Shown here in pieces: positions 32,499 to 32,615 of a stretch of DNA of 64,000 nucleotides (positions within the stretch are counted from its first letter, which is position 1; every line of letters starts with the position of its first letter). The position numbers and the translations under genes were made by a program. Under the pieces are notes generated by a model. The model ran no database searches and was not told where the DNA came from. It was given only the letters and a program-made list of their open reading frames with translations. The stretch is from the IMG/VR virus record IMGVR_UViG_3300042261_001312, positions 124,001-188,000 of that record, one strand, 5' to 3'.

Positions 32499-32615
32499 GG
32501 AAACTGTTTGTTAATACAGTACGAATAACTCAGAGGATAGAGTGATTGCCCGTTAAGCAATATGCCGTTGGTTCAAATCCAACTTTGTAAAAACAAAGTA
32601 ACAGACGAAATGTCC
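32499..32615 (+). ncRNA. tRNA-Asn(GTT)-like RNA with acceptor stem extended by the shared ACAGTA/AAAAACAAA module
   Basis: Cloverleaf 32519-32591: anticodon arm ATTGC-CCGTTAA-GCAAT, T arm GTTGG-TTCAAAT-CCAAC. Outer helix TGTTTGTTA/TAACAGACG. Confidence 0.7.

What the first reader, a model, noticed from the sequence alone, without database searches (positions are those of the whole stretch)
32499..32615. tRNA-Asn(GTT)-like RNA whose acceptor stem is extended rather than ending in CCA
The cloverleaf at 32519-32591 has a weak acceptor (G1:A72 mismatch), C33 and no CCA. It continues into the ACAGTA/AAAAACAAA loop, a 9-bp helix TGTTTGTTA/TAACAGACG, and GGAAAC...ATGTCC ends resembling the GGGAAAAC...ATGTTCCC ends of the His-like RNA, followed by T5. 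This looks like a discrete ~117-nt RNA that tRNA scanners would call a pseudo-tRNA.
Basis: partly seen in the sequence, partly recalled or inferred. Interest (0 to 1): 0.62.

Follow-up and report, generated by a model that had tools for sequence, protein, structure and literature searches.

The report
Phage Y-RNA-like tRNA mimic beside Ro60
The "tRNA-Asn" at 32519-32591 is the core of a conserved ~120-nt RNA whose two ends pair into a long closing stem; it lies in a cluster of tRNA-like RNAs just upstream of a hidden Ro60 gene in a 328-kb freshwater phage, so it is most likely a new form of Y RNA, not an ordinary tRNA.

Summary
The window comes from a 327,676-bp IMG/VR jumbo phage. A cloverleaf (G1·A72, C33, anticodon GTT, no CCA) is enclosed by a 9-bp helix and a terminal AGGA/UCCU helix, followed by T5.

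One sequence alone is not significant (fold z = -1.5), but the element recurs in at least 52 viral contigs. In 48 distinct copies, 94% of the proposed pairs form and 20 of 34 pairs show compensatory changes. The flanks are more conserved than the tRNA core, and the "anticodon" takes 18 different triplets. The neighbouring tRNA-Met keeps CAT wherever it was found.

Two sister RNAs in the same cluster carry similar closing stems. One is a circularly permuted "His-like" RNA with a closed acceptor stem.

The 555-aa ORF downstream has no sequence-level annotation, but its model is a full-length Ro60 (TROVE ring plus vWA/MIDAS; Z 18.6). Distant phages with Ro60-like genes only 25-34% identical also carry such RNAs next to the gene.

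Best reading: a Ro60-associated Y RNA of the YrlA (tRNA-mimic) kind in a new topology. Expression, RNA ends and Ro60 binding are untested.

The parts
32422..32452 (+). Promoter-like TTG-N20-TATGTTTG (Bacteroidota-type -33/-7), about 45 nt upstream of the RNA
   Evidence: TAnnTTTG box is conserved upstream of the cluster in relatives wherever the A-type RNA is the first module. The consensus itself is recalled from the literature, not tested here.
32498..32501 (+). P1 5' strand AGGA, pairing with 32613-32616
   Evidence: 100% paired in 48 sequences. Two sequences have GAGA/UCUC; distant copies have GGAGA/UCUCC and CAGA/UCUG.
32505..32513 (+). P2 5' strand TGTTTGTTA, pairing with 32599-32607
   Evidence: Present in the MFE fold. 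The inner 5 bp are nearly invariant, with 5 double changes at one pair; the outer half is 20-35% mismatched in close relatives but fully compensated in L069 and L070.
32514..32518 (+). Internal loop, 5' side (ATACA), part of the conserved (T/A)CAG(T)A motif
   Evidence: CAG is invariant in 22 of 22 and 48 of 48 sequences. The same ACAGTAA motif precedes the tRNA-like body in the C-type and H-type RNAs.
32519..32591 (+). tRNA-like cloverleaf. Acceptor 32519-25/32584-90; D arm 32528-43; anticodon arm 32545-61 with GTT at 32552-54; T arm 32567-83; A73 at 32591
   Evidence: ARAGORN tRNA-Asn(gtt); Rfam RF00005 54.3 bits; all four arms covary.
32592..32598 (+). Internal loop, 3' side (A-rich, AAACAAA)
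   Evidence: Sequence; unpaired in the fold.
32599..32607 (+). P2 3' strand TAACAGACG (family consensus ATAACAAAC)
32608..32612 (+). Internal loop between P2 and P1. Together with 32606-07 it reads CGAA.
   Evidence: CGAA at this site in 24 of 48 family members, CAAA in 22.
32613..32620 (+). P1 3' strand UCCU followed by a T run
32631..32703 (+). Ordinary tRNA-Met(CAT) embedded in the cluster
   Evidence: ARAGORN and Rfam 55.8 bits. It reads CAT in every locus where ARAGORN found it (most of the ~60 compared).
32746..32882 (+). C-type sister RNA: GGAGGGT...ACCCTCC acceptor, ~85-nt insert after position 9 that carries the GTGTTTACAGTAAT motif, then an anticodon-like arm and a T arm
   Evidence: 40 distinct homologues; the internal helix (consensus GAGATAG/CTATCTC) covaries by eye. 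Rfam tRNA reaches only 23.7 bits.
32894..33574 (+). GIY-YIG homing endonuclease ORF inserted between the C-type and H-type RNAs
   Evidence: phrog_314 at 8e-36; TIGR01453; Pfam GIY-YIG. Absent at this place in most relatives.
33604..33742 (+). H-type sister RNA ('His-like'): terminal stem GGGAA/UUCCC, a 10-bp second helix, then T arm, 3' acceptor strand, G-CCA, loop, 5' acceptor strand, D arm and anticodon-like arm (a permuted tRNA-like domain)
   Evidence: Fold z = -2.74. 23 distinct homologues with 95% of cells paired; acceptor 100% paired with 6 of 7 pairs double-changed.
34189..35856 (+). Cryptic Ro60/Rsr orthologue (TROVE HEAT-repeat ring plus vWA domain with MIDAS DxSxS)
   Evidence: AF2 pLDDT 89.8. 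The top 13 Foldseek hits are all Ro60. VIA Z = 18.6 over residues 16-524. D386/S388/S390 are conserved. ESM Atlas neighbours are TROVE clusters.
35868..36965 (+). ARPP-1 (PF20208) gene, a conserved neighbour of the Ro60-like gene

Best explanation
The element (about 32498-32620) is a phage-encoded Y RNA of the tRNA-mimic (YrlA-like) kind. It is made from a multi-RNA precursor that starts at a host-type promoter and also yields a real tRNA-Met and two sister tRNA-like RNAs. Its paired 5' and 3' ends (P1, internal loop, P2) form the module that the adjacent phage Ro60 orthologue would bind. The cloverleaf is the effector module: it would present a tRNA shape to host tRNA-binding proteins or exoribonucleases such as PNPase, as known Y RNAs do.

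Shown here: the conserved extended structure, its family, the Ro60 fold of the neighbouring gene, and the recurring linkage of the two.

Inferred: transcription, the RNA ends, Ro60 binding, and the effector.
For: 1. The structure is conserved in 48 distinct sequences with covariation in all helices. The two flank helices are kept by compensatory changes in distant phages (L069 at 90.7 bits; L070 and L071).
2. The flanks are more conserved than the tRNA core.
3. The 'anticodon' shows 18 triplets in 48 copies, while U33, A37 and A38 stay conserved. The adjacent tRNA-Met reads CAT in every locus where it was found. So no fixed codon is being read.
4. The downstream ORF is a full-length Ro60: pLDDT 89.8, ten Ro60 chains at Z 12.4-18.6, MIDAS motif conserved.
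5. The order helicase, A-type RNA, tRNA-Met, [C-type], H-type, Ro60, all on one strand, recurs across the ~60 loci compared, many of them truncated at contig ends. In four lineages with Ro60-like proteins only 25-34% identical, tRNA-like matches again lie beside the Ro60/ARPP-1 pair, upstream or downstream. These are strong in L070 and L071, modest in L072 (26 bits) and weak in L073 (16 bits).
6. There is precedent. YrlA RNAs lie within 4 kb of rsr on the same strand, have a terminal stem and a tRNA-like domain, and each species has at least two Y RNAs (PMC4201824). Thermus phage phiLo has two Y-like RNAs upstream of its Ro60, and these form complexes with host PNPase (PMC12135203).
7. The sister H-type RNA has the YrlA order T arm, closed acceptor stem, D arm. 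It has a 7-bp acceptor and an encoded CCA in 17 of 23 copies (my reading of the sequences), like M. smegmatis YrlA, which RNase P cleaves.
Against: - There is no expression or binding data, and no RNA run holds the locus.
- The motif that defines YrlA on the 5' strand (GNCGAAN0-1G) is absent from this RNA's 5' strand. CGAA occurs on the 3' strand in only 24 of 48 copies.
- No Rfam family other than tRNA matches at E <= 10.
- The cloverleaf is in normal, not permuted, order and is so canonical (54 bits) that excision as a working tRNA cannot be excluded.
- Three relatives (L016/L032 and L024) have the cluster without this RNA.
- Conserved synteny among close relatives is weak evidence by itself.
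Confidence: 0.6

Rival explanations
1. It is a genuine tRNA gene. The leader-trailer helix is only a processing scaffold. RNase P and 3' trimming plus CCA addition release a working tRNA-Asn, or in relatives tRNAs with other anticodons, including UCA and UUA suppressors.
For: The tRNA score is high and all tertiary-contact nucleotides are present. U33, A37 and A38 are conserved across the family. Most tRNAs of this genome also lack an encoded CCA. M. smegmatis YrlA is itself cut by RNase P and receives CCA (PMC4201824), so the two readings are not exclusive.
Against: - G1·A72 and C33 in this copy; mismatch at 1:72 is common in the family.
- 18 anticodon triplets sit on one body without matching identity changes.
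- Some members have lost G18G19 and the T-loop consensus together.
- The flanks are more conserved than the body.
- The genome already has a tRNA-Asn(GTT) in its main tRNA cluster.
- There is no sign of TAG or TGA recoding that suppressor forms would serve.
- No other tRNA of the genome gives a comparably scoring full-length match to the extended model.
Confidence: 0.2
2. It is a decoy or sponge for host tRNA-targeting defences (anticodon nucleases, tRNA-modifying or tRNA-sensing systems) and acts independently of Ro60. The variable anticodon triplet would track the specificity of the host nuclease.
For: The anticodon triplet varies on a constant scaffold while the loop geometry is preserved. 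Jumbo phages carry many tRNA and RNA-repair countermeasures (PMC7824862).
Against: This does not explain the conserved terminal stem or the repeated linkage to Ro60-like genes in divergent lineages. No nuclease partner was identified.
Confidence: 0.08
3. The flank helix plus T run is a transcription terminator or attenuator, or an RNase III/E processing site, that controls read-through into tRNA-Met, the other RNAs and Ro60. The tRNA is incidental.
For: A terminal helix is followed by T5. The element lies about 45 nt after a promoter-like site.
Against: The terminator scan did not call it. The helix encloses 73 nt of structured RNA, unlike an intrinsic terminator. In many relatives the RNA follows another module after only ~8 A residues, which suggests processing from one precursor. 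The helices are short for RNase III.
Confidence: 0.05
4. It is a decaying pseudo-tRNA with chance flank complementarity.
For: The single-sequence fold is not significant (z = -1.51). There are defects at 1:72 and position 33.
Against: It is conserved with covariation in 48 distinct sequences, including distant, GC-richer phages.
Confidence: 0.02

Closest known systems
YrlA (bacterial and phage Y RNA with a tRNA-like domain; Chen et al. 2014, PMC4201824)
   Same: - Encoded close to a Ro60 gene on the same strand.
- The 5' and 3' ends pair into a stem with an internal loop.
- The rest mimics tRNA, with D and T arms carrying the tertiary-contact nucleotides.
- Several Y RNAs per locus, processed from one precursor.
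- The sister H-type RNA shares the order T arm, closed acceptor stem, D arm, and a 7-bp acceptor like M. smegmatis YrlA.
   Different: - This RNA keeps the normal tRNA order and a full anticodon arm, and joins the Ro-type stem through its acceptor end.
- YrlA is described with a closed acceptor-like stem-loop between its T and D arms and no anticodon arm. My reading that it connects to the Ro stem through the anticodon-stem position is from memory of its figures.
- The GNCGAAN0-1G motif on the 5' strand is missing.
- The Ro60 partner is too divergent for Pfam TROVE to detect.
Yrl1 and Yrl2 of Thermus phage phiLo with phiRo60 (PMC12135203)
   Same: Phage-encoded Y-like RNAs upstream of a phage Ro60. 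They have a stem, internal loop, stem architecture and a CGAA motif, and are reported to form a complex with host PNPase.
   Different: No tRNA-like domain is described for Yrl1 or Yrl2. Here CGAA is only partly conserved and lies on the other strand.
Ordinary phage tRNA genes (Rfam RF00005)
   Same: Cloverleaf, tertiary nucleotides, and a score above the gathering threshold.
   Different: Conserved leader-trailer helices; a non-conserved anticodon; 1:72 mismatch and C33; linkage to Ro60.
Circularly permuted tRNA genes of Cyanidioschyzon merolae and two-piece tmRNA (relevant to the sister H-type RNA; PMC3978253 for the former, tmRNA from memory)
   Same: The 3' half (T arm, 3' acceptor strand, CCA) is encoded before the 5' half. 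If RNase P cuts, a two-piece molecule held together by helices would result.
   Different: There is no bulge-helix-bulge motif at the junction. In 6 of 23 copies the acceptor end is closed or has no CCA. The host is bacterial.
Phage T4 stable RNAs species 1 and 2 (rnaC, rnaD) in the tRNA cluster (from memory, not tested)
   Same: Small stable RNAs with some tRNA-like features, encoded among phage tRNA genes, of unknown function.
   Different: No Ro60 in T4. No sequence or structure comparison was made here.

Membership tests
Canonical tRNA (RF00005) | Cloverleaf matching the covariance model above the gathering score | tested here: met
   54.3 bits against 29; ARAGORN tRNA-Asn(gtt).
Canonical tRNA (RF00005) | Fully paired 7-bp acceptor stem and U33 | tested here: not met
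   G1·A72 and C33 in the window copy. The 1:72 pair is broken in most relatives. Position 33 is C in 9 and A in 1 of 48.
Canonical tRNA (RF00005) | Anticodon conserved among orthologues | tested here: not met
   18 triplets in 48 orthologous copies. The neighbouring tRNA-Met reads CAT wherever it was found.
Canonical tRNA (RF00005) | Matured to ~76 nt with a CCA end and aminoacylated | not testable with these tools
   No RNA run holds the locus.
Y RNA / YrlA | Encoded within about 4 kb of a Ro60 (TROVE) gene, on the same strand | tested here: met
   The RNA ends 1.57 kb upstream of ORF 34189-35856, which is Ro60 by fold. The linkage recurs in ~60 loci and in distant lineages.
Y RNA / YrlA | 5' and 3' ends pair into a stem interrupted by an internal loop or bulge | tested here: met
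   P1 and P2 with covariation.
Y RNA / YrlA | GNCGAAN0-1G (CGAA) motif near the 5' end | tested here: not met
   The 5' strand reads AGGAAACUGU... with no CGAA. CGAA lies on the 3' strand in 24 of 48 copies. In the sister H-type RNA, CGAA is on the 5' strand in 9 of 23 copies (my count from the alignment).
Y RNA / YrlA | tRNA-like domain with D and T arms able to make the elbow contacts | tested here: met
   G18G19 and the T-loop TTCAAAT are present. A sub-group has lost both together.
Y RNA / YrlA | Permuted order: T arm, closed acceptor-like stem-loop, D arm | tested here: not met
   This RNA has the normal order. The sister RNA at 33604-33742 meets the feature.
Y RNA / YrlA | Bound and stabilised by Ro60 | not testable with these tools
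   Needs RIP or EMSA.
Y RNA / YrlA | Match to a curated Y RNA covariance model | tested here: not met
   Nothing other than tRNA, plus chance-level hits to unrelated families, at E <= 10 in 30000-36000. I did not verify which Y-type models Rfam 15 holds.
Ro60/Rsr (for the neighbouring protein) | HEAT-repeat TROVE ring followed by a vWA domain with a MIDAS DxSxS motif | tested here: met
   Z = 18.6, 405 residues aligned to 2i91_B, and ten Ro60 entries on top. D386 and S390 are invariant and S388 at least 90% conserved in 48 homologues. Sequence methods miss it.
Permuted or intron-containing tRNA genes processed at a bulge-helix-bulge motif | Bulge-helix-bulge (3-nt bulge, 4-bp helix, 3-nt bulge) at the junctions | tested here: not met
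   Inspection of the junctions in the A-, C- and H-type RNAs found loops of 5-10 nt beside 9-10-bp helices and no BHB.

The most novel reading that the evidence does not exclude
The variable anticodon triplet is functional. On this reading the RNA is a Ro60-held 'caged' tRNA, or a codon/anticodon-specific adaptor. Either it is released by RNase P and 3' processing as a working tRNA (often with suppressor or rare anticodons) under Ro60 control, or its anticodon loop directs the Ro60 particle and its partners (host PNPase, or the conserved ARPP-1 neighbour) to a particular codon or tRNA. That would make it a programmable Y RNA.
Probability: 0.1. Interest if true: 0.9.

Novelty: new variant of a known kind. 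Interest (0 to 1): 0.68.

Why it matters
Y RNAs that mimic tRNA are known, but what the tRNA-like domain does is still open. This locus offers a natural series to work with:

- three different ways of joining one kind of closing stem to a tRNA body: through the acceptor end, the variable region, or the D region;
- one form is a complete cloverleaf with an anticodon arm whose triplet changes between phages;
- all sit next to a Ro60 so divergent that sequence annotation misses it.

The family is widespread in large freshwater phages, which probably infect Bacteroidota. This shows that Ro60/Y RNA systems in phages are under-counted, and that some phage "tRNA genes" reported by scanners are not decoding tRNAs. 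It also gives concrete constructs for asking what Ro60 particles recognise, and points to a conserved new partner gene (ARPP-1).

Tried and rejected
- **Intron-like or permuted-intron processing** (group I, archaeal BHB, ribozyme). I first read the shared motifs GTGTTTACAGTAAT and AAAAACAA as halves of an excised element. The inserts are too short for group I, there is no BHB geometry, and no hammerhead-type core is present. No Rfam ribozyme matched. The motifs turned out to be strands of a conserved helix.
- **Stop-codon recoding served by suppressor-anticodon copies.** There are no in-frame stops in helicase or Ro60 in 61 loci. Reading TAG or TGA through gives no gain in open frames in the genome.
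- **Sequence identification of the 555-aa ORF.** PHROGs, NCBIfam, Pfam on record, PDB phmmer and a 48-sequence profile against PDB all found nothing. Only the ESM Atlas features and the fold revealed Ro60.
- **GenBank phages.** Megablast of the locus found nothing. tblastn of the Ro60-like protein found one uncultured 462-kb phage, so there is no cultured relative or known host.
- **Expression.** No RNA run holds the locus.
- **Flank complementarity as a single-genome test.** This tRNA has the strongest leader-trailer duplex of the genome's 39 tRNAs (-14.7 kcal/mol; median -5.3). Two tRNAs inside tight clusters come close (-13.0 and -12.7), so this is weak on its own.
- **Literature.** Searches for permuted or split tRNA in phages, tRNA mimics and decoys found no description of this family.

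Full report
**Source and observation**

The window is bases 124001-188000 of a 327,676-bp IMG/VR phage record rated complete. It comes from lake or freshwater metagenomes. The genome is about 31% G+C, and in this region the long ORFs all lie on the + strand.

ARAGORN and Rfam both call a tRNA-Asn(GTT) at 32519-32591, at 54.3 bits against a gathering score of 29.
- G1·A72 is unpaired above six acceptor pairs.
- The anticodon loop is CCGTTAA, so position 33 is C.
- A73 follows and there is no CCA.
- TGTTTGTTA (32505-13) pairs with TAACAGACG (32599-607).
- AGGA (32498-501) pairs with TCCT (32613-16).
- A run of five T follows.

The minimum-free-energy fold of 32499-32622 is exactly this structure. 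Its z-score against shuffles is only -1.51, so one sequence proves nothing.

**A conserved family**

A pattern taken from the flanks finds 52 IMG/VR contigs, several from 246-357-kb genomes. A covariance model (R1) aligns 48 distinct copies at 96-137 bits. On that alignment:
- 94.2% of cells form standard pairs.
- 20 of 34 pairs change on both sides.
- The covariation score is 0.300, against 0.103 in shuffles (0 of 500 reach it) and at most 0.096 when partners are slid.

Caveat: this alignment was fitted to the structure, so these counts lean towards it.

Every cloverleaf arm covaries. The terminal helix P1 is 100% paired, and two copies have GAGA/UCUC in place of AGGA/UCCU. The inner five pairs of P2 are solid. 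Its outer half is mismatched in 20-35% of close relatives.

The decisive support comes from distant copies:
- In the uncultured 462-kb phage LR756500.1, the element scores 90.7 bits with P1 as GGAGA/UCUCC and all ten P2 pairs kept through changed bases.
- GC-richer copies in L070 and L071 again compensate in both helices.

The flanks are more conserved than the tRNA body: mean column entropy is 0.34 and 0.25 bits against 0.79. Within the 328-kb genome, R1 gives only one strong full-length match, this element at 115.8 bits. The next matches, at 56.5 bits or less, fall on ordinary tRNA genes.

**Not a fixed decoder**

Positions 33, 37 and 38 of the loop are conserved (U in 38 of 48, A in 46 of 48, A in 44 of 48). 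Positions 34-36 take 18 different triplets: TCA 10, GTC 8, TTC 7, CAA 4 and others.

The tRNA-Met about 40 nt downstream is a built-in control. It reads CAT in every locus where ARAGORN found it, which is most of the ~60 compared.

Other points against a fixed decoding role:
- Some members have lost G18G19 and the T-loop consensus together.
- The genome already has a tRNA-Asn(GTT) in its 35-gene tRNA cluster on the other strand.
- I found no in-frame stops in conserved genes of 61 loci, and no gain in open frames from reading TAG or TGA through. Suppressor-type triplets therefore have no visible use.

**Sister RNAs**

The exact 14-mer GTGTTTACAGTAAT occurs twice in the genome, both times in this intergenic region. 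With a T-arm anchor it finds 31 viral contigs.

- a GGGAA/UUCCC terminal stem
- an internal loop
- a 10-bp helix
- a five-way junction holding, in order, a T arm, a 3' acceptor strand with G-CCA, a short loop, a 5' acceptor strand, a D arm and an anticodon-like hairpin.

This is a circularly permuted tRNA-like domain with a closed acceptor. In 23 distinct copies, 95% of cells pair. The acceptor is 100% paired, with six of seven pairs changed on both sides. CCA follows the discriminator in 17 of 23 copies (my reading of the sequences).

The C-type RNA (32746-32882) has a normal acceptor and a normal 3' half, but carries an ~85-nt insert after position 9. That insert contains the same motif and a helix that covaries by eye, in 40 distinct copies.

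So one kind of stem module is joined to a tRNA body at three different places. In relatives the modules change order and copy number. They are often separated only by a run of A, which suggests one precursor.

Where this RNA is the first module, a TTG-N20-TAnnTTTG element lies about 45 nt upstream (window 32422-32452). From memory, this matches the Bacteroidota housekeeping promoter. One homologue of the downstream protein is labelled as coming from a Porphyromonadaceae bin. The host assignment is therefore an inference.

**The neighbouring gene is Ro60**

ORF 34189-35856 (555 aa) has no PHROG, NCBIfam, Pfam or PDB sequence match, even when searched with a 48-sequence profile. Three lines of evidence identify it:
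- The ESM Atlas features point to TROVE/vWA_Ro60 clusters: 62 of 100 neighbours, score 0.94.
- An alignment of homologues from an exhaustive HMMER search shows an invariant or nearly invariant DxSxS motif.
- Its AlphaFold model (pLDDT 89.8, pTM 0.88) matches only Ro60 structures at the top. The 13 best Foldseek hits include Xenopus, human, Deinococcus Rsr and Thermus phage phiLo Ro60. VIA-align gives Z = 18.6 with 405 residues aligned over 16-524, with ten Ro60 entries above the first unrelated vWA domain at Z = 9.9.

**Linkage between the RNAs and Ro60**

- The order helicase, this RNA, tRNA-Met, C-type (where I looked for it), H-type, Ro60-like, all on one strand, recurs across the ~60 loci compared. 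Many of those loci are truncated at contig ends.
- In LR756500.1, where the Ro60-like protein is 28% identical, an A-type and two C-type RNAs lie 1.5-3 kb upstream of it.
- I examined four further lineages with Ro60-like proteins 25-34% identical. Full-length R1 matches lie just downstream of the Ro60/ARPP-1 pair in L070 (65 and 64 bits) and L071 (51 and 35 bits). One lies upstream in L072 (26 bits). There is only a weak hit in L073 (16 bits).

**Interpretation**

Bacterial and phage Y RNAs of the YrlA type share these properties (PMC4201824):
- They are encoded within 4 kb of rsr on the same strand.
- They pair their ends into the putative Ro60-binding stem.
- They carry a tRNA-like domain.
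- They come two or more per locus.
- In M. smegmatis they are cut by RNase P and receive CCA.

Thermus phage phiLo has two Y-like RNAs upstream of its Ro60, and these form complexes with host PNPase (PMC12135203). The present RNAs fit that description in context and in overall design, and the H-type fits in topology too.

I therefore rate 'Ro60-associated Y RNA' as the best explanation (0.6). The closing stem would be the Ro60 handle and the cloverleaf the effector module.

Steps not shown: transcription, the RNA ends, Ro60 binding, and any partner.

Points against strict membership:
- The GNCGAAN0-1G motif is absent from the 5' strand. CGAA occurs on the 3' strand in 24 of 48 copies.
- No Rfam model other than tRNA matches.
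- This RNA is not permuted.

It works like a Y RNA, but it is a new variant and not a member of the curated YrlA model.

**Rivals**

- A true tRNA released from a leader-trailer scaffold (0.2). This is not exclusive of the Y RNA reading.
- A Ro60-independent decoy for tRNA-targeting defences (0.08).
- A terminator or processing signal (0.05).
- A decaying pseudogene (0.02), refuted by the covariation.

**Limits**

- Close relatives dominate the alignments.
- The Ro60 assignment rests on a predicted fold plus the MIDAS motif.
- The association was examined in only five distant lineages.
- No cultured phage or host is available.

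Noticed in passing
window 33604-33742: The 'His-like' RNA is a circularly permuted tRNA-like domain: T arm and 3' acceptor strand with G-CCA come first, then the 5' acceptor strand, D arm and anticodon-like arm. A terminal GGGAA/UUCCC stem closes it. It is conserved in 23 distinct sequences, and its loop triplet also varies. With a 7-bp acceptor and an encoded CCA, it could become a two-piece RNA after RNase P cleavage, as M. smegmatis YrlA does.
   Followed up: partly
window 32746-32882: The third tRNA-like RNA (C-type) has an ~85-nt structured insert between position 9 and the D region. The 5' acceptor strand can pair either with the 3' end or with an internal complementary segment (consensus GAGATAG/CTATCTC), and this covaries. 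That suggests two alternative conformations. There are 40 distinct homologues, and most have the loop GTTGAAA.
   Followed up: partly
window 34189-35856 and 35868-36965; L070-L073: The Ro60-like gene is followed, directly or after one small ORF, by an ARPP-1 (PF20208) gene, here and in four lineages whose Ro60-like proteins are only 25-34% identical. This is a conserved gene pair that my literature searches did not find described. ARPP has been predicted to act on ribose-containing molecules (PMC9503650).
   Followed up: partly
window 34189-35856: This Ro60 clade (325 representative proteins at E <= 0.001) is invisible to Pfam TROVE, PHROGs, NCBIfam and PDB sequence searches. Phage Ro60 systems are therefore likely under-counted in surveys.
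   Followed up: yes
window 32894-33574: A GIY-YIG (SegE-like) homing endonuclease ORF is inserted between two of the RNA genes. Its 3' end overlaps a hairpin that is conserved upstream of the H-type RNA in relatives lacking the ORF.
   Followed up: partly
L005, L014, L024, L034 (helicase gene): The DnaB-like helicase gene upstream of the cluster is split by an insert of about 1 kb after residue ~229 in several relatives. This may be an intein or an intron with a homing endonuclease.
   Followed up: no
G000:C1 274224-274393, 274512-274631, c5428-5604, c5669-5795, c53909-54016: The genome has further tRNA-like genes with large internal inserts. Several share the acceptor strands AGTC(A/G)G(G/A)...C(C/T)TGACT and class-II-like D arms, and one has two T-arm-like hairpins. 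ARAGORN reports them only in intron mode.
   Followed up: no
G000:C1 c37694-37779, c62895-62979, c64712-64803, c33976-34047: In the main tRNA cluster, tRNA-Asn, tRNA-Gln and tRNA-Pro carry unusually long variable arms (85-92 nt in total), and there is a CTA (amber-suppressor) tRNA. Yet the genome shows no gain in open frames when TAG is read through.
   Followed up: partly
window 33743-34188: The spacer between the H-type RNA and Ro60 has conserved blocks (33743-33859 and 34056-34141) with hairpin plus T-run ends, and a 30-codon ORF. It may hold a further small RNA of the hairpin type known as a second Y RNA in other species.
   Followed up: no
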